Numbered from the stretch's first letter, positions 1,703 to 24,005 are shown. The stretch: DNA of 64,000 nt from Octopus bimaculoides (GCF_001194135.2 NC_068989.1:69130969-69194968), one strand, 5' to 3'. Notes: a model not told the origin generated them from the letters alone. Numbers and translations: made by a program.

Positions 1703-2070
1703 CTGAGAATAAAGAATAAAAAAAATATATTCAAACTCAGGATAAGAATTACAGACTTTTATTCAAACTGGCAAAGTTGTTGCAGTGTCAGATAAAATGT
1801 TTCACTGTGATAGTTTTGTTTCTTTGCAGTCTTGAGTTCAAATTCCACCAAGGTAAACTTTGCCTTTCATCCTTTCAAGATCAATATAAAAGTACCAATC
1901 TAAGATTATAAACTGGTGGAACTGTAAAGATACTGGATCAGATGCCTTGTGGTGTTTGTTCCAGTTCTTTGTGTTAGAGTTAAAATCCCACAACTTTCTT
2001 CAGTGGTAGACTTAATGAGTGACCTGATTTAACACCATGGCCTGGCATCTTGGTTGCTTTTAACAAAATT

Positions 2071-2280
2071 CATGCTACTCCAGACTGATGATGAGCAATG
2101 ACTCTGAAACCAGTCTCTGAATGCTGGTTTTGCTGGGTGGAGGTGCTTGTCTCCACTTTGGAAACATAAGGACACAGGAAATGTGTCAAGTCCAACAGGA
2201 AACAGTGTTTCCTAGGGCTAAATAGCAGTAGCATTCTTCCCTTTCATGGGACTGTCACATTAAGTTGACAACATACCATC
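2071..2280 (+). repeat. Direct repeat copy 1 (~210 bp, hammerhead-bearing)
   Basis: Aligns without gaps to 4362-4571; 12 substitutions counted by eye (~94% identity). Confidence 0.95.
2079..2121 (+). ncRNA. Minimal type-I hammerhead ribozyme motif, copy 1 (weakened stem I)
   Basis: TCCAGA-CTGATGA-T-GAG[CAATGA]CTC-T-GAAAC-CA-GTC-TCTGAA. Core CUGAUGA/GAAA and a GUC triplet; predicted cut after 2115. One mismatch in stem I. Confidence 0.6.
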
Positions 2281-2650
2281 ACTTTATCGTGCTGCTACTG
2301 CATAAATCTCTCTGAAAGATTTAGAAATGTATTATTTCTATTTTCAAAAATCAGTGAATGTATTTCAAAGGTGGATAGGCATCGACAGCCAGCAAGGCCA
2401 TGCCTTTTTTGTCTACGACACGTTGTCTCCAGTTTGTTACCTGCGGTAAGGGAGTTCGTTTCCTGTTCTGTTTATTGTAAATTTATGTTATTTTGAAGTG
2501 AAATACTTTAATTGAAATCAAACTGTTGTCCTTTGAAAAACAGTAATTTTCGCTCTGCAGGGTGGAAAAATTTCTGTTAATTTTATTGTGAACTGTGATT
2601 TTTACGAATATATTGTCTGAAAATCTTCTTGTCATTTCTGACAAGTGTGA

Positions 2651-3543
2651 AGCAACGAAGTAATAGAGACCAAACCAGCTGTCAATTATGCTGCAGCAAC
2701 AGGAAGGGGTTTGAATAATGATGTTTTGCAAGTGAAAGAAGTGAAGTTCAATGAAAAGAGATTGAAAAAGTCTAATGAACTCATAGTTAAAGAAGGAAAC
2801 AGCCTGAGGCTGACCCCGCCAAAAGAAGCAATAGAGGAAACAGCTAAAAAAAAACTGTAGTGTATAGAATGCTGTCAAATTCAAGTAAAAGGGTGGAAAT
2901 AGCAACCGTTGAAGCAATGGAAGAATGTCTTAAGGACATTAAACACCTAATGACATTCTACACCAGAGTCAAGAAGTATGGCACAGTGGAGGTAGGGTTT
3001 GCAACCGAACAGGACACAATAAAGCGCTCCATGGTGCCATTGAGGTCAGAAGAGTGGGCACTACAGCCAACCTACTGTGGCAAACGTGCAGCCAGAGTTA
3101 GGATTGGCAGAGTGCCCCCAGAAATCGATGAAGCGTGGCTGGTGTCAGCCATCCTCTTCAACACGGAGGAGGAGACCAATGTGCTGAAGGTCATGAGGAC
3201 AACAGAGGTAAACTGGTTTGGATACAGCCTCGAGGTGATGGTCCAAATCAGTTTACCAGACCTGCATAAAATTGCAGATGAAATTATGCTGCCAGAGGAT
3301 GTTGAACTAAGAGTGGTAGTGGAGGGAAGACCTCCCATCTGCTACCACTGTGGAGTACGGGGACACATGAAAGCAAGGTGCCCCCAGAAACAAGAAGTAG
3401 AACAAGAGCAGCAGGAGGAGGAGGTGGAACAAGGAGTGGTAGTACAAAGCCAAGTAAGTGAAGAGATGGAAAATGTAGAAGGAAAATACTCAGTTGGAAA
3501 AAGAAAAAAGAGATGAAAATGCATATTCACCACCAAAAAGCCT

Positions 3544-3588
<45 letters not shown>

Positions 3589-4079
3589 AGAGAGAAAAGG
3601 CAACATAGAGGTGATACGAATTGAAAGAACAGAAATAACACAAAAGAAAATTACAGAAGAAAAAACAAGTATGCGGAAAGGAAAGGAAGCAACAATAAAG
3701 AGTAAGAGAGAGACAGAGATGGTTGCGACACAAAAACCAGGAACATTAGGAGAGAATAGAGATGGGAAACAGGAAGGAGTACCGAAAGGAAAAAATGTGA
3801 GGATGATGATAGTATAAAAAGAGTGTAGAAATAGAGAAACGGATCACTAAATTGAAAAATGTAATCAGAGTAAAATTATTGGGGAATGAGGATACTGAAG
3901 ACAACAAGGCAGTTTTGAGTGAGTGAGTGAGTGAGATAGTGAGTGAGAGAGAGAGAGAGAGAGAGAGATTAAAAGAATTAGTTGGTGAACAAATTGTAAT
4001 AACGGAGTTGCTGGTTCAATGCAACAAACTACCACCAGTGGTACCATTTGACGACATAATAGAGTACATAGTAAATTGA
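2651..4079 (+). pseudogene. Disrupted non-LTR retrotransposon ORF1/gag-like protein with CCHC zinc knuckle (L1/Tx1-like)
   Basis: Frame 2651-2860 (..KPAVNYAAATG..) joins the tracked ORF 2860-3516 across an A9 run. Contains CYHCGVRGHMKARC (CX2CX4HX4C), then a K/E-rich segment and LKELVGEQIVITELL...IIEYIVN-stop at 4077-4079. Interrupted by a poly-A run and a (GAGT)n/(GA)n tract. Confidence 0.75.
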
Positions 4080-4338
4080 AAGTAAGTGAAATTTGTAAAA
4101 CTTAAAATAATGCTTAAAAAAAAAAAAACGTTGTAAAGAAGAATAATGAACTGTTCGTGAATAATGTGTTACATAAACAGTTAAATAACACTACCTGTGT
4201 GGGGTGTGCAGGTAAGACATTTCATTTTTCATTATATCATTATATTCATAATTCCATTCAATCTATGTTTTTTGTACCCCACTGTATTGTGTTGTTTGTC
4301 TTTGCTTGTCCCTTCTTTGTAAGAGCCAATGTGCTTGT

Positions 4339-4351
4339 AATAAAGAATAAA
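4339..4351 (+). promoter_or_regulatory. Tandem AATAAA polyadenylation-type signals at the 3' end of the ORF1 element
   Basis: AATAAAGAATAAA, ~260 nt after the ORF1 stop and just upstream of repeat copy 2. Confidence 0.5.
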
Positions 4352-4354
4352 GCT

Positions 4355-4425
4355 AGCAAGCCATGCTACTCCAGACTGATGACGAGCAATGACTCTGAAA
4401 CCAGTCTCTGGATGCTGGCTTTGCT
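4355..4425 (+). ncRNA. Minimal type-I hammerhead ribozyme motif, copy 2 (extended stem I)
   Basis: Stem I TCCAGA/TCTGGA is extended by GC/GC, AAGCC/GGCTT and AGC/GCT across internal loops. Core CTGATGA 4376-4382, stem II GAG/CTC, GAAA 4397-4400, two-bp stem III AC[CA]GT; predicted cut after C4406. Confidence 0.72.
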
Positions 4426-4571
4426 GCGAGGAGGTGCTTGTCTCCACTTTGAAAACATAAGGGCACAGGAAATGTGTCAAGTCCAACAGGAAATGGTGTT
4501 TCCTAGGGCTAAATAACAGTAGCATTCTTCCCTTTCATGGGACTGTCATATTAAGTTGACAACATACTATC
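4362..4571 (+). repeat. Direct repeat copy 2 (~210 bp, hammerhead-bearing)
   Basis: Matches 2071-2280 at an offset of 2291 nt. Confidence 0.95.
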
Positions 4572-5271
4572 AAAATCCAGTCTGTTGAATGTATTTGGGG
4601 CAGGTTTTCAGTTTTGAAGATATCTCCCCCACCTCCTTCCCTCCTGTCAATCACAAAAACCCTGTAATAGGTCATGGGTACTAAGAGTACAACAAATTAG
4701 AATCTAATTAAACTATATTATAGAAAAGAAATTTTAACAATGATATTCCTTTTTTTCAGTCAATTTACTTTGAACTAAGCAGTTATAACACTTATAAGGT
4801 ACAAATCCTCTGTTTGAACTTGGGGAATTAAGTTGACTGAAACGATTGACTTCAAATCAAGATTACAAAAATGACTCAAGGGAAATAACCACAACACAAT
4901 TGAGTAAGAGTTTACAGCTTACATTACAGCATATATATTGCTCTTAAGAATATATTATAAGTATTATTATTACAATAATATTCCTTCAGGCGTCGATAAA
5001 TTAAGTACCAGTGGGACATTGGGGTAGATGACCAGTCCTCTCCCCACAAATTTCAGATATTGTGCCGTTAGTACAAAGGATTATTACAATAATATATGGT
5101 ATTGCTATTATTACAATAGAAGAAGATGAAACAAACAAGAAACCTGGAGAATATCTATTTTCCAAAGATTTAGCAAAGATCCAAACAACTCACAAAAATG
5201 ATTATACATTTATATATAAATAACAAAAGTAGTGAAAAAAAAAAATGAAAGCAGGAAAAATCAATACATAC

Positions 5272-7847: not shown

Positions 7848-8406
7848 NNNNNNNNNNNNNNNNNNNNNNNNNNNNNNNNNNNNNNNNNNNNNNNNNNNNN
7901 NNNNNNNNNNNNNNNNNNNNNNNNNNNNNNNNNNNNNNNNNNNNNNNNNNNNNNNNNNNNNNNNNNNNNNNNNNNNNNNNNNNNNNNNNNNNNNNNNNNN
8001 NNNNNNNNNNNNNNNNNNNNNNNNNNNNNNNNNNNNNNNNNNNNNNNNNNNNNNNNNNNNNNNNNNNNNNNNNNNNNNNNNNNNNNNNNNNNNNNNNNNN
8101 NNNNNNNNNNNNNNNNNNNNNNNNNNNNNNNNNNNNNNNNNNNNNNNNNNNNNNNNNNNNNNNNNNNNNNNNNNNNNNNNNNNNNNNNNNNNNNNNNNNN
8201 NNNNNNNNNNNNNNNNNNNNNNNNNNNNNNNNNNNNNNNNNNNNNNNNNNNNNNNNNNNNNNNNNNNNNNNNNNNNNNNNNNNNNNNNNNNNNNNNNNNN
8301 NNNNNNNNNNNNNNNNNNNNNNNNNNNNNNNNNNNNNNNNNNNNNNNNNNNNNNNNNNNNNNNNNNNNNNNNNNNNNNNNNNNNNNNNNNNNNNNNNNNN
8401 NNNNNN
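7848..8406. other. Assembly gap (N run)
   Basis: Ns. Other large gaps are at 12906-13596, 44928-45058 and 56748-57282. Confidence 1.
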
Positions 8407-9559
8407 CTTGTGTTTTTTCTGGTAGTCTGACCTTAGAGTCCCTCATAGCGTGAGGCATTATCGTATAGTAATGCCCTTATATAAATATAAATATATATTT
8501 CGGGAATAAATGATGGATTTTTTCCCTTATGAGGTTTTTTTCACGCTAGCTACTTGATAAATTCTTGTAAAAGAATTTGTCCTATTATTGAATTTATATA
8601 TATATATATATATATATACACATACACACACACAAGGTGTAGAAACAAATGCTCCAAGAAAGAGAAAAAAAACCTATCCCATTGTTATGAGCAACAAAAA
8701 ATGGATACATAGAGTACAAGTAACTTTTGAACAATTTCTGTTTTTTACATTACAGCTGCTCTGCACCATCTTCCCTTTATGCACTGCCATTAATTATCAC
8801 CTCCTCCTAGACCCACTCCTACTTTTCTTTACCTTCCCACCTTAAGTGGATTCACCTTTGACCACACCTCCACCCAAGTCTTTCATTCACAGCATGCACC
8901 TCTAATCATTTGTCACTCTTACATTCTTGCAAACCTACCAAGCCAGCCATCCTCAAACCTCGGTCCCTATTCTCTCACATTTGCTTGTCCCTATTCTTTC
9001 TCATATCTACTTCTTGTATTTTGAGGTTATGCCCTGATACCACATCAAACAATCCTTTCTCCTTTTCTATTCAGAGTCATGATGTATCTCCTGCAAAGGA
9101 GACACATGGCTATCCCAATGAGGATAGCCATGTACCCTCTACTAGGCACCTGTTTGCAACCCACTCTCATATTTTAGCCTTTGAACACCTGGCACAAATC
9201 TACTTCCACCACTCAGCTGAGGGGTTTTGTGAGCTACTTGGTGACAATCATTAGTGCTGGTGACACAAAAAAAGCACCCAGAACACTGTAAAAAGGTTGG
9301 CATTAAGTGCATCTAACTGATGAAATCATCCAAAAGCAAATATTTAAGCATAATGCAGTTCTCTGGCTCATCCGATCCAGTCAAACCCTCCAGTCCATGT
9401 TAACCCTTTGAAGATGGAGCCTCATTTGGAGTTTCAGTGCCAAAAAGAAAAAGCCCTTTTCACAAGGGCATGCACTTATTTTCAAAAAAAAAATTATAAA
9501 AAAACTAATTACTTTACATATATAAAACTATATATATTCTTGGAGGAAATTGAATGAAC

Positions 9560-9616
9560 TAATATAATCTTCTTCATCATTCAACGTTTTGGCTGATAGA
9601 TCAGCCCTGTCATCTC
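9560..9616 (-). CDS. UBE2O: Candidate 57-nt frame-preserving cassette exon of UBE2O (phase 1-1)
   Basis: A pyrimidine tract and TTAG acceptor follow a 78-nt intron. Reads (G)DDRADLSAKTLNDEEDYI(S) in frame. The donor GTTCAT is weak, and direct 9695-to-6042 splicing also keeps the frame. Confidence 0.35.
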
Positions 9617-9694
9617 CTAAGGGTTAAATGATGAAGAAAGAAAAAAAGAAACAAAGAAAATGAGAAAACATGCGAGTGAACTAAGTGGACTAAC

Positions 9695-10758
9695 CATTTT
9701 CATTGCAGACTGCAGGGTCATGTTCAATAACGGTGGTGTCAAGTGAATTTAAGGTCTCTTTAACAAGGTTCGCAGCAGTGATGTCGATTTCATTTGCCTC
9801 TTGAGATTTCTCAGATGTAGCAGAACTAACATTTTTACAAGTATCATTAGAATCGGAAACATTTTTTATATCTGCCTCTGAGCTTGTTTGAATGGCTTTG
9901 TTTTTATTGGGCCAACTGGATAGAGAAAACCAATCAAGACCAGGTGGAGCCTCGACATCATCGACAAAATCACTCTCAGTCTGAATACCTTTATCTTTAT
10001 GCATATCATCACAGAAAGGACTGTTCTTTGTGGCTTCCAGTATTCGTTTCCGCCATTTCTTGTTCACTTCCTTCAGCGTCCGACCAATTCTGTCCTGCAG
10101 CAGTTTTACAAGACGTAAACACGAGTCCTTTGTATTTTCATTCCACTTTGTACAATCGGGATTGAAATTTTTAAAGTCCTGAGTTGAAAAGATCAACTCG
10201 TCAAAGTCCAATTGTGTGTTTGGGTCTGGAGAACTCCCTGCTTCTGTCTTTTTATTTGTTGGAGATTTCCGAGTAACCGGATTATCTGAAATACCAGAAC
10301 TACAGGCCGAGCTTTCATTTGTGGCACTTGACCCTGAGTCTTTGGAACTATCCTCTTTGGTTGTCATATTTGCTTTGTCTACACTTGATTCCTTACCAGC
10401 AACATTTGAGATGTATTGTTTTGTTGCCATCAATAAATTTGATGGCCGTTTGTTTGGAGAAGTTGTAAGTGGTATACAGCTGTCAGAGTGACTGTTACAT
10501 GCTGTGTTAGTATTCAGCCGTTTGTGAATCTCCTCAGAGATTTGTAAAACCAAATCATTGATATCGGGATCGACGAAATGATACATTTTTAACAACATAT
10601 CGAGACTTTGGCAGTTATAGAACATTTTGAGAACATTGTAAGGGTAGCCCGGATCGTTGTTCTTGATCAAAGTCAAAAGGCGAGACAAAGCTCTGTTACC
10701 ACGCTGAATTAAATTATCCAAATGCTCCTTCCGTTCATCATATGTTCCACATCGTGAA
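9695..10758 (-). CDS. UBE2O: UBE2O large exon, 1064 nt (phase 2-1)
   Basis: Open frame of 354 codons containing the tracked 343-aa ORF; phases fit both neighbours. Helical segments (e.g. DSCLRLVKLLQDRIGRTLKEVNKKW) alternate with Ser/Thr/Asp-rich linkers. Acceptor at 10759-10760, GTTAGT donor. Confidence 0.85.
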
Positions 10759-12045
10759 CTAGAAGAAATTAAACAGAAGATATTTAAGGTATATAAAACA
10801 CAACTTCAGAAAATACAACAACAAATAATTATATATAAAAAAAAATAATGTTTATTTGTCAGAATTAAATTATAAATCAAGCAAATGAAATAATCACAAC
10901 AAAACTCAGATTTTGATCATAGAGAAATCTGTTATCAAATTAAGATTGTATATGCAGTTTCTTGATAAAATCTATAGTTAAAAGATAGATTACAATGTAC
11001 TGATTTTCTCCCTACTCATTGATTGCTATATGAATATTGAAAATTGCATTATTAGTTATTACAATTAATATTATAATTACCTAGAGAGTGATAGGCAGAA
11101 CCAGTACTAAGTTGTAATAGTATTTAATTCTATCTCACCATGTTCCGTAGGGGAAGGAGTTCAATATTACTCCCCAATTCTGAATAATAACACAAGTACC
11201 TGTTGACAACTGAGGTTGATTCAATCCATTATGCCACTCACTGGCCAATATATGGCTGGGACCAATGTTAAAAATCATTATTATAATTATTGTTACAACC
11301 AGTAATACTGATGCAGTCCAACAGTAAAGCTGGTAGCAAACATATTTCACAGTCCAATTCTGCTTCACTCACATTACCAAAGGTTTTGCTAAATAAATGA
11401 ACATCAGTTCCCATTATACTTTTATTCCTTTGACTACCGCCATGCTGGAGTACCACTTTAAGGGGTTTTAGTCAAACAAATCGACCCCAGGACTTATTCT
11501 TTATAAGCCTAGTACTTGTTCTATCAGTCTCTTTTTCCAAACCACTAAGTTACAGGGACGTAAACACACCAACATTAGTGGTCAAGCGATGGTGAAGGGG
11601 AAGACAACAAACACACAAATACACACACACATACGACAGACTTCTTTCAGTTTCTGTCAACCATATAATTATAAATCTGATGGTTCTTGTTAAGAAATAA
11701 CTTGTATTCCATCATAGAAATCATGTCAAAAGTAGAACATATGAATAAAACAAGACTCCAAAAGCTGCATTGCAGGCTATTCATTTAAGAGAGGAGCAAT
11801 TAAAAATAATTGCTACAGAGTAAAAGGGACATTTTAGTCTTGTTTCAGATAAACTCTAGTGGCAGTGGAATGATAAAGTGCATCCAGTCCATACAGGAAA
11901 GTGGTTGGTGACAAGAAGAACATTCAGCTGTACAAAGCATACAAAAACAAGGCAAAATAATATGAACGTACACAGGATGTGAATTCCACAAACTGCATCA
12001 TAGGCTTTCTATCTAGCTACAGACAACTTCTCTTGTTGCCTGTCG

Positions 12046-12076
<31 letters not shown>

Positions 12077-13779
12077 TCTGTACGACTCTTACTCTTTCTT
12101 TTAGCCTCCTTCACATTTTCTTCATTCTTCCCACTTTCCTTTTCTCACTCCCCCTCTCTCACATTTCTTGGCCTTTCCTTCATTCTCACTTTCCCTCCTC
12201 TTTTACCTCACTCAGTCCCTTTCCTTTCTTTTTCTCTCTTTCTCGTCCCACCCTAATTCTTCAATCCCTCTGCCCCCTACCTCTCTCCTCTCCTTCCACA
12301 TGACCGGTGTTACGCCAAGCCTGACCTTTCTTTCTTGGTTCAACTACCATCCATGTAGCATCTCTTATATTCATTCCCATGACTTCTATCTCTTATGTTT
12401 TTGCCGTAAGGCTTCACTCCCACACACGCCAGCTTAATTTGAATCGTCCTTAGTCGAAAGACACTTGTTGTTTGTATTTGTAATCATGTACCATTTCTCT
12501 GTTTTTTTCTGTCCTTGTTTTTGTATATATTTGCTTGCTTTCTTCTAAGGAGTTGAGTGCTCTTAGCTTAGATTTTCTTGGAGCAGGCCAGATTGGATAC
12601 ATATACATGTAAGAAAATAAAAAGTAATAATAAGGCAGAATGCTAAACTGAAAGCATATTTTAATATAGATGTGTATAAGGATGATTAAAAAGGATTTCT
12701 AACCAGCTTTCATTGCATGGCAAATTTTCAAGAAGAGGGAAAATGAAAATAATGTTTTTTACAAAAAAATAAAAAATATATAAAAAAATAAATATACCAA
12801 TACATTATATTGTCTTTGAGCTTTTAAAGTTCAATGGTAATCCATGTAGATAATTGTTAGAAAGATTAGGATGCATGTAATTAAAATTAATGTTGTGTTT
12901 AAAAANNNNNNNNNNNNNNNNNNNNNNNNNNNNNNNNNNNNNNNNNNNNNNNNNNNNNNNNNNNNNNNNNNNNNNNNNNNNNNNNNNNNNNNNNNNNNNN
13001 NNNNNNNNNNNNNNNNNNNNNNNNNNNNNNNNNNNNNNNNNNNNNNNNNNNNNNNNNNNNNNNNNNNNNNNNNNNNNNNNNNNNNNNNNNNNNNNNNNNN
13101 NNNNNNNNNNNNNNNNNNNNNNNNNNNNNNNNNNNNNNNNNNNNNNNNNNNNNNNNNNNNNNNNNNNNNNNNNNNNNNNNNNNNNNNNNNNNNNNNNNNN
13201 NNNNNNNNNNNNNNNNNNNNNNNNNNNNNNNNNNNNNNNNNNNNNNNNNNNNNNNNNNNNNNNNNNNNNNNNNNNNNNNNNNNNNNNNNNNNNNNNNNNN
13301 NNNNNNNNNNNNNNNNNNNNNNNNNNNNNNNNNNNNNNNNNNNNNNNNNNNNNNNNNNNNNNNNNNNNNNNNNNNNNNNNNNNNNNNNNNNNNNNNNNNN
13401 NNNNNNNNNNNNNNNNNNNNNNNNNNNNNNNNNNNNNNNNNNNNNNNNNNNNNNNNNNNNNNNNNNNNNNNNNNNNNNNNNNNNNNNNNNNNNNNNNNNN
13501 NNNNNNNNNNNNNNNNNNNNNNNNNNNNNNNNNNNNNNNNNNNNNNNNNNNNNNNNNNNNNNNNNNNNNNNNNNNNNNNNNNNNNNNNNNNNNNNNAATC
13601 CCACCATTTACTTATATACATCAGGTTGGTGCAAAAGTAATGTCCGATTTCTAGAAAAAATGTTTCAGAGCGAATTTATCAATTTTTTAACCTTTTATAG
13701 ATTTAAGATATTCAAAAGGAGTCTGTATTCTGTAATAAAGAGAGACTCTTTATGAATTCAAGGATGATACAACCTGTAG

Positions 13780-14880
13780 CCAACAAATTAGTAGAGGGGA
13801 AAAAATTCTGAAGCTTGGATTTTTGTTATTGGTGCAAATGTCGATGAATGCAATTTTTCTATTTTTTTAAATTTTGATCTGGGATCTGTGCAGAGCCATC
13901 CTTTGACATAGACAGTTTTTTGTTTGGCCTATGTATTTTCTCTTGGCACCCAGAGCAGGTTAGTGCGTATATCAGGTTCTCTGAAGCAGAATGTGAAGCT
14001 GCTTTTCACTGTGAAATGTTGTCCCTGTTTGAAGGAGAACTCTGATCCCTCAACTAAATTTACACATATACCACAGTTGGGTCTTCCGTATTTCTTTACT
14101 GACGGCTTCAGTGTTGTTGTTGAGCATATTCGGGCTTGTGTTAGGAGACTTTTCATAGATTTAAACTGTCTCTTGCTTTTTATGATGGCGTGCGTTTGGA
14201 GGATTAAGTTCATTCTGTGGTCCTTTTTTAGCAGGGTTTTGAAGGATGGTGTCGAAGGCTTCATTGTTAAGAGGGTTGTGTATGGAGATGTATGGTAGGG
14301 CTTTTGGTTGTAAATGTCTGAATTCGTGGATGATGAGTAGGGCATGTTGAAAGCATATGTCAATTAGTAAAGGTGGGTAATTCTTGGTGATGAGTGTATC
14401 CTTTAGTTCATATAGTCGTGTATCTCTGGTGCTTGCATTAGAAACTATAGTACATATCCGTTTTGCTAGGTTGAAGGGGATATTTATTCTGGTGTGTCTG
14501 GGGTGGCATGAGATGAATGATAGATATTGCTTGGAGTCCGTGGGCTTATAGTATATATCTGTTTCTATTATGTTAGATTTCTTAATGAGGATGTTGAGGA
14601 AGGGAAGTTGCTGATGGCTATATTCCATCGTGAATTGAATGTTTACGTTAAGTCCATTTATAAGTGCTTGAAATTCTTTAAGTCTCTCTACTTTCATGCC
14701 AAAGAATGAAACAGTCATCCAGATATCTCTTCCAGTTATTTTCTATGTAGAGGGAGAATGGGCTGCCATATTTTTCTAGAACCTTACAATAAAGACTAAT
14801 TTCTAGATATCCCATGACTAGGTTAGCAAAAGTTAGAGGCAGTGGGTTTCACATGCAGGACCTGCTATTATAGGTGTCAA
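13780..14880 (-). mobile_element. Penelope-like element remnant: RT C-terminal half plus GIY-YIG endonuclease
   Basis: ANLVMGYLE...WKRYLDDCFILW (YLDD at 14714-14725), IYYKPTDSKQYLSFISCHP...IPFNLAKRICTIVS, CGIC, NLIYALTCSGC/YIGQT...QRMALHRSQIK. Multiple frameshifts; boundaries approximate. Confidence 0.88.
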
Positions 14881-16699: not shown

Positions 16700-16900
16700 A
16701 CCCAACATCTAAAGATCATGCTTCACAACCTCATCCCATGTTTTCCTGGGTCTATTTCTTTGACAGCTGTCCTCATCCATGCACATCACATGACCAAACC
16801 AGCACAGTATTCTCTCTTGCACACATCTGATGCTTCTTAGGCTCAATTTTTCTCTCAAGACACTTACACTGTTGTACATGCACATCCAGTGAAGCATACT
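16700..16900 (-). mobile_element. RTE-clade LINE 3' coding fragment
   Basis: SLRSIRCVQERILCWFGHVMCMDEDSC...RPRKTWDEVVKHDL, typical of the RTE ORF C-terminus (WFGHV...GRPRKTW). Confidence 0.75.
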
Positions 16901-23228: not shown

Positions 23229-23440
23229 TGTGTGTTTGTGTGTTTATGCTTGTACCCACCATAACTTGACAACCAATGCTGGTGCATTAAGTACTAGGCT
23301 TACAAAGAATAAGTCATGGGGTCGATTTCTTTGACTAAAAAACCCTTTAAGGCAGTGCTCCAGCATGGATGCAGTCAAATGACTAAAAAAGTAAAAGAAT
23401 ACATATATATATAGTACAAAAACAAAACAAAAAAAATTAC

Positions 23441-24005
23441 CTGCCAGACAACATTAACTAGAGAAAAAGTGTAACAGACTTCTACAGGTATTTTTTCCCC
23501 AGGTTTCAACTCCCTTTCAGGTAAAATTAATTTCTGACGGGCCTTTCTCCCTCGCACTCTCTTCATAAGACGGGTCTTCAGTGCAGGACCATGCTGAAAA
23601 GCTCTCTTCCTGCGTAGCGAAGAACTAGAAGCATTCGAGTGTCCAGATGCAGAAGCTTTATCAGATTCCTCCTCGTCTTCTAGTTCCTCGTATTCTTCAA
23701 GATTCTCAATTTCATCAATGCTTGTCACACACACATTATCACTGACTTCAGGTACACACTGGTCGTTGGCATCAGGTGTCACTGTTGACTCGTTCTCATG
23801 ATTTCCATCTTTTGCCTTCTTCATATTATTTGGTGTAAAGCCATTGACTAGGCTGTTCTTACAAGCATCCCCTCCATTTTGTAAGTTGGGGGGGTTGTGA
23901 TATTTTGGTTGGCTGTTTAGTACAACATCACTCTCCTTGATTGTATAGTAACATTTGTCTCCAATTTGAATAGAGCTGTGGTGAAACCAATCTAATTTCT
24001 GCATT
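23441..24005 (-). CDS. UBE2O: UBE2O exon (phase 2-0)
   Basis: MQKLDWFHHSSIQIGDKCYY...acidic/Ser-rich linker...RKRAFQHGPALKTRLMKRVRGRKARQK...LKPGEKIPVEVCYTFSLVNVVWQ, similar to human FDHAQRQLGERC and FKPGDRVAVEVVTTMTSADVMWQ. AG acceptor, GTAA donor. Confidence 0.93.

What the first reader, a model, noticed from the sequence alone, without database searches (positions are those of the whole stretch)
2071..4571. Hammerhead-ribozyme-bounded element carrying a gag/ORF1-like gene but no reverse transcriptase
Seen in the sequence: two ~210-bp direct repeats (offset 2291 nt, ~94% identical) each begin with a type-I hammerhead core. Between them lie a CCHC zinc-knuckle ORF1-like frame, a 3' UTR and AATAAA signals, and no endonuclease or RT sequence. 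Weaker similarity may continue past the repeats (aaaatcagtgaatgtattt at ~2347-2365 vs aaaatccagtctgttgaatgtattt at ~4572-4596). Established: minimal type-I hammerheads occur in Penelope-like element terminal repeats and in small non-coding metazoan retrozymes, whose RNAs are cut to unit length, can circularise, and are thought to be mobilised in trans. Inference: cleavage after 2115 and 4406 would release a 2291-nt unit RNA encoding its own RNA-binding protein, i.e. a protein-coding retrozyme-like element. I do not know this architecture as described, but cannot exclude that it has been. The alternative is a target-specific Tx1-like half-LINE inserted into a hammerhead repeat with an unusually long duplication.
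Basis: partly seen in the sequence, partly recalled or inferred. Interest (0 to 1): 0.85.

Follow-up and report, generated by a model that had tools for sequence, protein, structure and literature searches.

The report
ORF1-only retroelement inside hammerhead repeat
In an octopus genome, a decayed mobile element that carries only an RNA-binding "ORF1" gene sits at a fixed spot between two copies of a small hammerhead-ribozyme repeat. It is most likely a half-LINE that targets this repeat, not a new protein-coding ribozyme circle.

Summary
Two 211-nt direct repeats (2071-2281 and 4362-4572, 94% identical, 2291 nt apart) each start with a hammerhead-like core. Between them lies a CCHC zinc-knuckle gene and no RT or endonuclease. 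This is not a chance duplication, because an independent Octopus sinensis locus has the same layout.

The parts look like two separate elements. The repeat is a ~330-nt, strongly self-paired, retrozyme/pLTR-like monomer (M). M1 (2071-2403) is complete and M2 (4362-4572) is partial. Its hammerhead helices covary between octopus lineages, but both window copies are degenerate and Rfam finds nothing.

The interior (2404-4360) is a separate unit. It has a 5' UTR, a frameshifted ~470-aa RRM+CCHC ORF1-type gene and a 3' end just after AATAAA. In O. bimaculoides, three diverged units of this kind sit head to tail between one pair of hammerhead repeats, separated only by a 13-17-nt motif. In O. sinensis, a 67-nt copy of the unit's 3' end lies elsewhere with a perfect 17-bp target duplication and no hammerhead.

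Best reading (about 0.5): an ORF2-less LINE-type element that inserts at one site of a hammerhead repeat. The "protein-coding retrozyme" reading remains possible (about 0.25-0.3).

The parts
2071..2403 (+). M1: a complete ~330-nt hammerhead-repeat monomer (retrozyme / PLE-pLTR-like), running from CATGCUACUCC to GGCCAUGC
   Evidence: Positions 2071-2281 repeat at 4362-4572. As a 328-nt circle the monomer folds at -114.4 kcal/mol against -77 +/- 5.6 for shuffles, z = -6.8. The L001 homolog gives z = -5.1.
2078..2122 (+). Hammerhead-like motif 1 (type I topology); predicted cleavage after C2115
   Evidence: The core CUGAUGA...GAAA...GUC is present. Helix I has 4 bp and helix II has 3 bp flanked by a U.U mismatch. 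The helix III segment ACCAGU is not palindromic. No Rfam hit.
2125..2400 (+). Long-range rod stem of M1 (2125-2167 pairs with 2358-2400)
   Evidence: Helices come from the minimum-free-energy fold. The same 12-bp closing helix is predicted in L001 (8953-8964 with 9244-9255).
2387..2403 (+). 5' junction motif AGCCAGCAAGGCCATGC (candidate target-site duplication, upstream copy)
   Evidence: It matches 4351-4366 at 15 of 17 positions with one indel. This is not significant within the window alone. Its weight comes from homologous junction motifs in L001, L002 (four copies) and L003.
2404..4360 (+). B: ORF1-only, LINE-type body (5' UTR, ORF1-type gene, short 3' UTR), with no ORF2
   Evidence: Boundaries are inferred from the junction motifs, from the L002 unit borders and from the 5'-truncated solo copy in L001 that ends at ...AATAAAGCTAGCAAAG.
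2663..4079 (+). Ancestral ~470-aa ORF, now a pseudogene. Segments: 2663-2854, 2848-3513, 3506-3811 and 3813-4076, in three different frames. The start codon is ATG->ATA.
   Evidence: tblastn of relatives against the window. Relatives P0001 and P0004 and the L001 ORFs read through these borders.
2860..3516 (+). Surviving 218-aa ORF: two RRM-like halves plus one CCHC knuckle (knuckle at about 3337-3387)
   Evidence: Pfam zf-CCHC. The family alignment has conserved P67, G71, C158, C161 and C171. In the AlphaFold model, residues 71-150 have pLDDT around 80 and the best Foldseek matches are RRM domains.
3546..3586 (+). Run of 41 A inside the decayed linker of the ORF (an expanded microsatellite, not a retroposition tail)
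   Evidence: Sequence. Coding similarity to P0001, P0004 and L002-B continues downstream of it.
4339..4351 (+). Two overlapping-spaced AATAAA signals at the 3' end of B
   Evidence: Sequence. Conserved in L001, and as AATAAAGAA / GATAAAGAG at the end of each L002 unit.
4351..4366 (+). 3' junction motif AGCTAGCAAGCCATGC (B 3' end / candidate target-site duplication, downstream copy)
4362..4572 (+). M2: partial second monomer of the hammerhead repeat, possibly continuing to 4596 with a ~64-nt internal deletion
   Evidence: 94.3% identical to 2071-2281. At each locus the two repeats are each other's closest relatives: 22 locus-specific sites against 1 position-specific site.
4369..4413 (+). Hammerhead-like motif 2; predicted cleavage after C4406
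   Evidence: Same as motif 1, but with C.U flanking helix II and a 6-bp helix I.

Best explanation
Two nested mobile elements, not one.

(1) M is a ~330-nt non-coding repeat that is strongly self-paired and rod-like. It carries a type-I, Penelope-style minimal hammerhead. It is present here as a partial tandem (M1 complete, M2 partial), which is how metazoan retrozymes and Penelope pseudo-LTRs are laid down.

(2) B (2404-4360) is an ORF2-less, LINE-derived element (a 'half-LINE'). It encodes only an ORF1p-type RNA-binding protein (RRM-like domains plus a CCHC knuckle) and ends a few bases after its AATAAA.

B integrates by target-primed reverse transcription, using a reverse transcriptase supplied in trans. 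Its preferred site is the monomer junction of M, about 15 nt upstream of the hammerhead. There its 3'-terminal AGCUAGCAAG matches the target AGCCAGCAAGG, and a 16-17-nt motif is left on both sides.

Shown: the anatomy, the recurrence at the same site, independent B copies, and the structure and covariation of M. Inferred: the TPRT mechanism, annealing of the 3' end to the target, the trans-acting RT (octopus L1-Tx1 LINEs or Penelope elements), and past activity of the hammerhead.

The window copy is dead. It has a lost start codon, at least three frameshifts and degenerate ribozymes. Repeat divergence of about 6% suggests an age of several million years.
For: B occupies the same site in M at every informative locus.
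- Window.
- L001, O. sinensis: the 5' junction ACAGCTAGCGAGGCTATGCC|TTTTTTGTC is homologous to window 2384-2412.
- L002, O. bimaculoides: three ORF1 units are only about 35-45% alike as proteins by my reading of the ORF translations (not computed). They lie head to tail between ONE pair of hammerhead repeats (8145-8324 and 12668-12847, 93%). They are separated only by CTAGCCGAACAAT-type motifs at 8395, 9126, 10937 and 12565. Each unit ends in (A/G)ATAAAGA, and the last motif is followed directly by the hammerhead.
- L003: a diverged B is preceded by a 5'-truncated M and an ACAGCTAGCC motif.

B moves without M. L001 11961-12035 is a 67-nt copy of the B 3' end. It ends in AATAAAGCTAGCAAAG, is flanked by a perfect 17-nt duplication (ACTTGAACTTGCACCAA), and has no hammerhead repeat nearby.

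B is LINE-ORF1-like.
- It has a zf-CCHC knuckle and an RRM-like fold.
- RRM(s) followed directly by CCHC defines the Jockey-like ORF1p class (PMC3905857).
- The family has 462 representatives, and those with a species name are cephalopods: mostly Octopus, plus one Argonauta.
- None of the ten longer members scanned has RT or EN.
- In contig L004 a distant member is followed after about 400 nt by an ORF starting MSICLGCLNVKGLRSNWKQGRFLN. From my own knowledge this resembles the start of an AP-endonuclease ORF2.

M is a unit of its own.
- Fold z-scores are -6.8 and -5.1.
- L001 carries an inverted 5'-truncated M copy abutting the direct one, a Penelope-type insertion hallmark (PMC8557442).
- Hammerhead helix I is fully replaced yet still complementary between the window and L002. 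The middle pair of helix II goes A-U, then A.C, then G-C. Helix III is palindromic in L001 and L002. These features are listed for Penelope minimal hammerheads (PMC4209133).

M and B have different divergence between the window and L001: 82.7% against 88.2% identity. This fits separate histories.

Active L1-Tx1 LINEs and Penelope elements are both reported in O. vulgaris (PMC13282606).
Against: - No ORF2-bearing relative was seen at this site, and no uninterrupted M-M junction was seen, so the 'target' is inferred rather than observed.
- All six B units examined lack ORF2, even though they are deeply diverged. That is unusual for sporadic deletion derivatives.
- There is no poly(A) or simple-repeat tail at the B 3' end.
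- The 17-nt junction repeat is not significant within the window alone (179 of 300 shuffles match a 12-mer score as good).
- The window and L001 share the same outer boundaries (start at 2071-2073, end at 2281). That is equally natural if the whole composite is copied as one unit.
- The AP-endonuclease reading of L004 rests on 24 residues, with no Pfam or PDB support.
- Only four octopus loci could be examined.
Confidence: 0.5

Rival explanations
1. Composite 'cargo-carrying retrozyme'. B once inserted into a retrozyme monomer. Since then the composite (unit 2282-4572, or 2116-4406 as RNA) has been transcribed, possibly cut by the two hammerheads, and copied as ONE unit by Penelope-type machinery. 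That copying regenerates the terminal repeats as pseudo-LTRs.
For: - The window and L001 share the same outer boundaries and align end to end, including both repeats.
- At each locus the two repeats are sister sequences, as expected if they are regenerated at insertion.
- L001 has an inverted 5'-truncated copy, and L002 has a 'tail' at one end. Both are Penelope-style insertion features (PMC8557442).
- B sits next to the closing stem of the M rod, so the M fold (95 pairs inside 2116-2403) and the hammerhead helices survive in the composite RNA.
- Non-autonomous Penelope-type elements with pseudo-LTRs are known, as is one Penelope-type family with an upstream zf-CCHC ORF plus a hammerhead.
Against: - L002 still requires B to insert site-specifically on its own three times.
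- The L001 mini-copy uses the B 3' end, not the end of the repeat.
- M and B differ in divergence between the two composite copies.
- In L002 the outer boundaries differ (start at the equivalent of 2162, end at the equivalent of 2338).
- The window hammerheads share a non-palindromic helix III and an unpaired 10.1/11.1 position, and no Rfam hit was found.
- Known metazoan retrozymes are 170-400 nt and non-coding (PMC7229834).
Confidence: 0.28
2. An internally deleted Penelope-like element whose ancestor encoded this ORF1 upstream of RT-EN. On this reading the repeats are its own pseudo-LTRs and the RT-EN ORF has been lost.
For: - Pseudo-LTR-like repeats carrying a hammerhead.
- ORF1s exist in some Penelope-type elements, including a zf-CCHC ORF in Chlamys-2_cBra (PMC8557442) and esterase ORF1s (PMC3905857).
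- A possible Penelope-like RT fragment lies elsewhere in the window at 13929-14718, minus strand. This rests on motif resemblance only.
Against: - No RT or EN remnant exists in any of six units.
- The ORF ends about 280 nt before the unit's 3' end in all of them.
- Three units share one pair of repeats in L002.
- No family member among those scanned is fused to or adjacent to a Penelope RT.
Confidence: 0.08
3. A gag-only LTR-type non-autonomous element (LARD/TRIM-like) with 211-bp LTRs.
For: Direct terminal repeats. The repeat can be read as TG...CA (2074...2281). A CCHC gag-like gene lies between the repeats.
Against: - There is no tRNA-type primer-binding site after 2281 (the sequence there is CTTTATCGTGCTGC...).
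- The repeat limits differ between loci.
- An inverted partial copy abuts the 5' repeat in L001.
- Three units lie between one repeat pair in L002.
- The protein has RRM-like domains rather than a capsid fold.
Confidence: 0.03
4. A chance local or segmental duplication around a retroposed gene, with no element biology behind it.
For: Only one copy exists in the window.
Against: - The same layout occurs at an unrelated O. sinensis locus with different flanks.
- Related layouts occur in O. bimaculoides.
- The two repeats are sisters at each locus.
Confidence: 0.02

Closest known systems
HAL1 ('half-L1') elements of mammals (own knowledge: Bao & Jurka 2010)
   Same: A LINE derivative that keeps the 5' UTR, ORF1 and a short 3' end but has no ORF2. 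It must use RT/EN supplied in trans, and can persist and diversify as a family.
   Different: - The ORF1 here is of the RRM+CCHC (Jockey/Tx1-like) class, not the L1 coiled-coil/RRM/CTD class.
- Copies are concentrated at one site of another repeat.
- There is no poly(A) tail.
- The autonomous partner has not been identified.
Target-specific Tx1-clade LINEs, e.g. Tx1L inside the tandem PTR-1 repeats of Tx1D in Xenopus (own knowledge: Garrett, Knutzon & Carroll 1989; Kojima & Fujiwara 2004)
   Same: A non-LTR element inserted at one defined sequence of another repeated element, so that copies are flanked by direct repeats of the host element. The ORF1 has RRM+CCHC. L1-Tx1 LINEs are reported as active in O. 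vulgaris.
   Different: - No ORF2 is present, so clade membership cannot be tested.
- As far as I know, the target (a hammerhead-bearing retrozyme/pLTR-like repeat) has not been described as a LINE target.
Metazoan non-LTR retrozymes (Cervera & de la Pena 2020, PMC7229834; Li et al. 2026 preprint 10.64898/2026.07.22.740005)
   Same: M matches on four counts: a ~330-nt monomer, a type-I hammerhead, short tandem copies, and a highly self-paired RNA. Penelope elements are present in the same genome.
   Different: - Only about 1.6-1.9 monomers are present, and they are interrupted.
- The window hammerheads are degenerate.
- Expression and circularity are untested.
- The 2291-nt composite is far larger than known retrozymes (170-400 nt) and is coding.
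Penelope-like element pseudo-LTRs with minimal hammerheads (Cervera & de la Pena 2014, PMC4209133; Craig et al. 2021, PMC8557442)
   Same: - Partial tandem giving direct terminal repeats.
- An inverted 5'-truncated copy at the 5' end (L001).
- A 'tail' at one end (L002).
- A short helix I, a nucleotide between A9 and 10.1, and a small palindromic helix III (L001, L002).
   Different: - There is no RT/GIY-YIG ORF between the repeats.
- Helix II has only 3 bp, against 6-8 bp in the published minimal hammerheads.
- An extra nucleotide precedes G12.
Chlamys-2_cBra (a green-algal Penelope-type element with an upstream zf-CCHC ORF and a 3' hammerhead; PMC8557442)
   Same: A gag-like CCHC ORF and a hammerhead in one retroelement.
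   Different: That element also encodes EN+RT and belongs to a different kingdom. No homology to it was tested.

Membership tests
Hammerhead ribozyme, type I (Penelope-style minimal form) | Conserved core CUGANGA ... GAAA ... UH in type-I order | tested here: met
   Both window copies have CUGAUGA...GAAAC..GUC. L001-5' has A9>C and L002 has G5>A, as expected for dead copies.
Hammerhead ribozyme, type I (Penelope-style minimal form) | Helices I and II are base-paired, and the pairing is maintained by covariation | tested here: met
   Helix I is CCAGA/UCUGG in the window and L001, against UCUGUG/CACAGA in L002. The middle pair of helix II is A-U (window), A.C (L001) and G-C (L002). Only three lineages were compared, and helix II has only 3 bp.
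Hammerhead ribozyme, type I (Penelope-style minimal form) | G10.1-C11.1 pair with a bulged nucleotide after A9; a small palindromic helix III that allows a dimer | tested here: inconclusive
   A bulged N followed by a G...C pair is present, but an extra U or G precedes G12. Helix III is palindromic in L001 (ACUAGU) and L002 (AUUGCGAU, using G.U pairs) but not in the window (ACCAGU). The features are those listed in PMC4209133.
Hammerhead ribozyme, type I (Penelope-style minimal form) | Match to the curated covariance models (Rfam Hammerhead families) | tested here: not met
   No hit at gathering score in the window and none at E<=10 in 1900-4800. Published minimal hammerheads also needed relaxed descriptors.
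Hammerhead ribozyme, type I (Penelope-style minimal form) | Self-cleavage | not testable with these tools
   Needs in vitro transcription of monomer and dimer constructs.
Metazoan non-LTR retrozyme | Short tandem repeat of 170-400 nt with one type-I hammerhead per monomer; non-coding | tested here: met
   This holds for M alone: the monomer is 328-333 nt, there are two copies, and each has the motif. The 2291-nt composite does NOT meet the size or the non-coding criterion.
Metazoan non-LTR retrozyme | Highly self-paired RNA | tested here: met
   Circular fold z = -6.8 for the window and -5.1 for L001, against dinucleotide shuffles.
Metazoan non-LTR retrozyme | Expressed as linear and circular unit-length RNA | not testable with these tools
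Penelope-like element (autonomous) | ORF with a telomerase-like RT and a GIY-YIG endonuclease | tested here: not met
   No RT or EN domain was found in the window interior or in the L001 and L002 units. There is no room for one beside the 1.4-kb ORF.
Penelope-like element (insertion style) | Partial tandem (pseudo-LTR), an adjacent inverted 5'-truncated copy, and a one-sided tail | tested here: met
   Direct repeats occur at three loci. An inverted copy lies at L001 8758-8900. The L002 3' repeat extends about 57 nt further than those of the window and L001. The features are those described in PMC8557442.
LINE ORF1p, Jockey-like class | One or two RRM domains followed immediately by one or more CCHC knuckles | tested here: met
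   zf-CCHC hit. In the model, residues 73-153 form a beta-alpha-beta-beta-alpha-beta fold, and the best Foldseek matches are RRMs (TAP, UPF3, IMP3; E 7e-4 to 1e-2). The first RRM-like half is inferred from the alignment only. Class definition: PMC3905857.
LINE (autonomous non-LTR retrotransposon) | ORF2 with endonuclease and RT downstream of ORF1 | tested here: not met
   ORF2 is absent from all six octopus units. The only hint is an ORF2-like start after a distant family member in L004, which is unsupported by Pfam or PDB.
Site-specific non-LTR element (Tx1-like behaviour) | Independent copies at the same target sequence, with the target motif on both sides | tested here: met
   Five full units at four loci sit at the homologous site of M, and L002 has four motif copies at its unit borders. 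One truncated copy lies elsewhere, so the behaviour is a preference, not an absolute rule. The sample is small.
Site-specific non-LTR element (Tx1 clade) | RT phylogeny places the element in the Tx1/L1 clade | not testable with these tools
   No RT is present, and octopus genomes could not be searched by DNA.
LTR retrotransposon derivative (LARD/TRIM) | Identical LTR limits, a PBS next to the 5' LTR, a PPT, and a 4-6-bp target duplication | tested here: not met
   By reading the sequence, there is no TGG-type PBS after 2281. Repeat limits differ between loci.

The most novel reading that the evidence does not exclude
The composite is a working unit: a retrozyme that has acquired a protein-coding cargo. 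A ~2.3-kb RNA bounded by two type-I hammerheads keeps the retrozyme rod and ribozyme intact. It encodes its own RRM+CCHC RNA-binding protein and is copied as a whole by Penelope-type reverse transcriptase. A whole cephalopod clade of ORF1-only elements would then live in obligate association with hammerhead repeats.
Probability: 0.25. Interest if true: 0.75.

Novelty: new variant of a known kind. Interest (0 to 1): 0.45.

Why it matters
If the best reading holds, octopus genomes contain a diversified clade of ORF1-only retroelements that home to one position of a hammerhead-ribozyme repeat. That would be a new target class for site-specific non-LTR elements. It would also be a case of one non-autonomous element parasitising another.

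It also identifies a retrozyme/pLTR-like hammerhead family in cephalopods, with helix covariation between species.

If the rival reading holds, it would be the first protein-coding animal retrozyme. It would link ribozyme-processed RNAs to ORF1-type RNA chaperones. Either way the copy in this window is a dead relic.

A practical point follows for annotation. These composites mimic LTR elements, and fragments of the ORF are mis-annotated as parts of host genes.

Tried and rejected
- Rfam at gathering and permissive thresholds found no hammerhead.
- The single-sequence AlphaFold model was useless (pLDDT 37). A second model built from a 9-sequence alignment was usable only for residues 71-150.
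- A PDB sequence-profile search returned only zinc-knuckle hits.
- Two profile searches with the word-indexed protein tool returned almost nothing. As a result only four extra loci could be fetched, and proteins such as P0008 (623 aa, intact) could not be looked up.
- One metagenome scan with a conserved 25-mer of the repeat found no match.
- I considered whether the run of 41 A marks the end of a retroposed mRNA. Rejected, because relatives read through it.
- I considered whether the SINE-like halves at 1833-1897 and 4980-5113 are a long target duplication around a 3.1-kb insertion. Rejected, because the overlap is only about 73% identical, so they are two different copies.
- A codon-position test between the window and L001 gave 19, 17 and 29 mismatches, which is not significant. 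Most of that divergence is post-insertion decay.
- The junction motif as a target duplication within the window alone is not significant.
- The AP-endonuclease reading of the L004 end got no Pfam or PDB support because it is only 24 residues long.
- The possible Penelope RT fragment at 13929-14718 got no Pfam hit.


Full report
**Organism and context.** Relatives of the encoded protein come from Octopus sinensis, O. bimaculoides, O. vulgaris and Argonauta hians. The window is therefore octopus DNA. The feature lies in a region rich in SINE-like repeats.

**1. The observation**

The repeat finder and blastn confirm a 211-nt direct repeat at 2071-2281 and 4362-4572. It is 94.3% identical with a 2291-nt offset, and there is no further copy in the window.

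Each repeat begins with CUCCAGA-CUGAUGA-N-GAG-CAAUGA-CUC-U-GAAAC-CA-GUC-UCUG(G). The GUC lies at 2113-2115 and 4404-4406. A relaxed type-I descriptor finds only these two sites in 64 kb on both strands, against 0.03 expected in shuffles. I wrote that descriptor after seeing the motif.

Rfam finds no hammerhead at gathering score or at E<=10. The minimum-free-energy fold of the 60-nt motif alone is unremarkable.

The 218-aa ORF at 2860-3516 carries a zf-CCHC knuckle that just passes Pfam's cut-off. No RT or endonuclease domain is found in any interior ORF.

**2. The gene is longer and broken**

tblastn with relatives shows that the ancestral ORF spans 2663-4079, about 470 aa. It is split into four segments in three frames:
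- 2663-2854
- 2848-3513
- 3506-3811
- 3813-4076

The start codon has changed from ATG to ATA. The run of 41 A at 3546-3586 lies inside this decayed linker and is not a retroposition tail.

The protein family has 462 representatives at E<=1e-3. Members with a species name are cephalopod. Full-length members are 400-860 aa. They share:
- a core of two RRM-like halves followed by one CCHC knuckle;
- a low-complexity linker;
- a small C-terminal domain.

The ten longer members scanned have no RT or EN. Some are chimeric gene models containing WD40, LDLa or RGS domains.

A model built from nine sequences is confident for residues 71-150 (pLDDT around 80), and its best PDB matches are RRM domains. 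RRM(s) followed directly by CCHC is the Jockey-like class of LINE ORF1 proteins (PMC3905857). A PDB profile search sees only the knuckle.

**3. Related loci**

- **L001** (O. sinensis CM016877.1). The whole 2.5 kb, including both repeats, aligns at 81% (8898-11319) with unrelated flanks. This excludes a chance duplication. An inverted, 5'-truncated copy of the repeat (8758-8900) abuts the direct copy.
- **L002** (O. bimaculoides CM046603.1). It has 180-nt repeats at 8145-8324 and 12668-12847 (93% identical, 4523 nt apart). Between them lie three different ORF1 units.
- **L003** (O. bimaculoides). It holds a diverged unit preceded by a 5'-truncated repeat. Its 3' side falls in an assembly gap.
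- **L004** (a 1.9-kb Logan contig of unknown species). It holds a distant family member followed after about 400 nt by an ORF starting MSICLGCLNVKGLRSNWKQGRFLN. From my own knowledge this resembles the N-terminus of a LINE AP-endonuclease. It is too short for Pfam or PDB support.

**4. The repeat is a unit of its own (M)**

Window 2071-2403 forms a complete monomer.
- Permuted at the predicted cleavage site and folded as a 328-nt circle, it gives -114.4 kcal/mol against -77 +/- 5.6 for dinucleotide shuffles (z = -6.8).
- A long stem pairs 2125-2167 with 2358-2400.
- The L001 homolog gives z = -5.1 and has the same 12-bp closing helix.

High self-pairing, a ~330-nt monomer, a type-I hammerhead and short tandem copies are the published traits of metazoan retrozymes (PMC7229834). 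A 2026 preprint relates retrozymes to Penelope pseudo-LTRs. The partial tandem, the adjacent inverted truncated copy and a one-sided tail are Penelope-type insertion features (PMC8557442).

**5. Is the hammerhead real?**

Comparing the five copies:
- Helix I is CCAGA/UCUGG in the window and L001, but UCUGUG/CACAGA in L002. The sequence is fully replaced and still complementary.
- The middle pair of helix II is A-U in the window, A.C in L001 and G-C in L002.
- Helix III is palindromic in L001 (ACUAGU) and in L002 (AUUGCGAU, with G.U pairs), as in Penelope minimal hammerheads that act as dimers (PMC4209133). In the window it is ACCAGU.
- The position after A9 varies (U, C, A, A, A), like the published bulge. 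An extra U or G precedes G12, and helix II has only 3 bp.
- L001-5' has A9>C and L002 has G5>A.

I conclude that the family ancestrally carried a Penelope-style hammerhead. All copies seen are impaired, including both in the window.

**6. The interior is a second element (B) with its own ends**

In L002 the three ORF1 units (my reading of their translations suggests roughly 35-45% protein identity; this was not computed) are separated only by CTAGCCGAACAAT-type motifs at 8395, 9126, 10937 and 12565.
- The first motif follows M1.
- Each unit ends in (A/G)ATAAAGA just before the next motif.
- The last motif is followed directly by the hammerhead.

The window has the homologous arrangement: AGCCAGCAAGGCCATGC at 2387-2403, then the unit's 5' UTR, and AATAAAGAATAA-AGCTAGCAAGCCATGC at 4339-4366, then the hammerhead. 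L001 and L003 have matching 5' junctions. Within the window alone the 17-nt repeat is not significant. Its weight comes from the cross-locus pattern.

L001 11961-12035 is a 67-nt copy of the unit's 3' end. It ends in AATAAAGCTAGCAAAG, is flanked by a perfect 17-nt duplication, and has no hammerhead repeat. This is the signature of a 5'-truncated target-primed insertion that uses the unit's own 3' end.

Between the window and L001, the M parts are 82.7% identical and the B parts 88.2% identical.

At each locus the two repeats are sisters: 22 locus-specific sites against 1 position-specific and 1 conflicting site. They were therefore made from one template when the array, or the composite, was laid down.

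**7. Mechanism and alternatives**

Best reading (about 0.5): B is an ORF2-less LINE derivative (a half-LINE) that integrates by target-primed reverse transcription using RT supplied in trans. Its preferred site is the monomer junction of M, about 15 nt upstream of the hammerhead. Its 3' AGCUAGCAAG matches the target. Repeated hits at that site build the L002 array.

Both candidate RT sources, L1-Tx1 LINEs and Penelope elements, are reported as recently active in O. vulgaris (PMC13282606).

Main rival (about 0.28): the composite itself is copied as a unit by Penelope-type machinery.
- This explains the identical outer ends of the window and L001 copies.
- B sits beside the closing stem of the rod, so the M fold and the ribozyme helices survive in the composite RNA.
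- It still needs independent site-specific B insertions to explain L002.
- It does not explain the solo B fragment.

I judge an internally deleted Penelope element with its own ORF1, an LTR-type gag-only element, and a chance duplication to be unlikely, for the reasons given under the rival explanations.

**8. Limits**
- Only four octopus loci could be fetched.
- No octopus genome could be searched by DNA.
- No uninterrupted M-M junction, no ORF2-bearing relative at this site and no RNA evidence were available.
- The half-LINE and composite readings can be separated by the census, tree and RNA experiments listed under next steps.

**9. Verdict**

The feature is a new variant of known kinds: a half-LINE nested at a fixed site of a retrozyme/pLTR-like hammerhead repeat. 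The window copy is a relic. With about 6% divergence between its repeats it is roughly several million years old, using the calibration quoted. That age is an inference.

Noticed in passing
window 13929-14718 (minus strand): Two overlapping ORFs (185 and 144 aa) contain ...LPFLNILIKK...DIYYKPTDSKQYLSFISCHPRH... followed by a Cys-rich stretch. From my own knowledge this resembles the C-terminal RT/linker region of Penelope-like elements. The fragment is 5'-truncated and runs into the N gap at about 12.9-13.6 kb. Pfam gave no hit, and no repeat similar to M lies next to it.
   Followed up: partly
L001 11961-12035: A 67-nt, 5'-truncated copy of the ORF1 element's 3' end, flanked by a perfect 17-nt duplication (ACTTGAACTTGCACCAA). 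It lies about 640 nt downstream of the full copy, shares that copy's subfamily-specific bases, and starts with a junction-like motif (AGCTAAGCCAACAA). Why a truncated copy carries that 5' motif is unexplained.
   Followed up: partly
L004 1857-1930 (Logan contig from SRR11869391, species unknown): About 400 nt after a distant ORF1 family member, an ORF starts MSICLGCLNVKGLRSNWKQGRFLN and runs off the contig. It may be the start of a LINE ORF2 endonuclease. It is unsupported by Pfam or PDB because of its length.
   Followed up: partly
window 1833-1897 and 4980-5113; L001 4278-4448, 7531-7708, 8047-8194: A ~170-nt SINE-like family (GAGTTCAAATTCCACCAAGG...AAGTACCAG...TTTCAGACCTTGTGCC...(ATT)n). 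The two window pieces overlap by about 30 nt of the consensus but are only about 73% alike there. They are therefore separate copies, not a duplication around the element.
   Followed up: yes
window 16709-16897 (minus strand): A short ORF ending ...RILCWFGHVMCMDEDSCQRNRPRKTWDEVVKHDL looks like the C-terminal tail of a LINE reverse transcriptase (own knowledge). It was not analysed.
   Followed up: no
window 9690-10721 and 23375-24004 (minus strand): Two long ORFs (343 and 209 aa) that are Ser/Asp/Glu-rich and free of repeats. They are probably exons of a host gene in whose neighbourhood or intron the element lies. Not searched.
   Followed up: no
window about 7.8-8.4 kb, 12.9-13.6 kb, 42.9 kb and 56.7-57.3 kb; L002 about 7.2-7.4 kb; L003 11030-11600 and beyond: Assembly gaps (runs of N), mostly next to microsatellites. 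The L003 gap hides the 3' end of a related element.
   Followed up: no
window 3917-3969: (GAGT)n and (GA)n microsatellites lie inside the decayed C-terminal part of the ORF. The only permissive-threshold Rfam match (snoZ178, E 7.9) lies on this low-complexity stretch and is spurious.
   Followed up: yes
proteins P0023, P0144, P0123: Annotated octopus gene models fuse fragments of this ORF1 family to WD40, LDL-receptor or RGS domains. These are probably annotation chimeras caused by intronic copies of the element.
   Followed up: no
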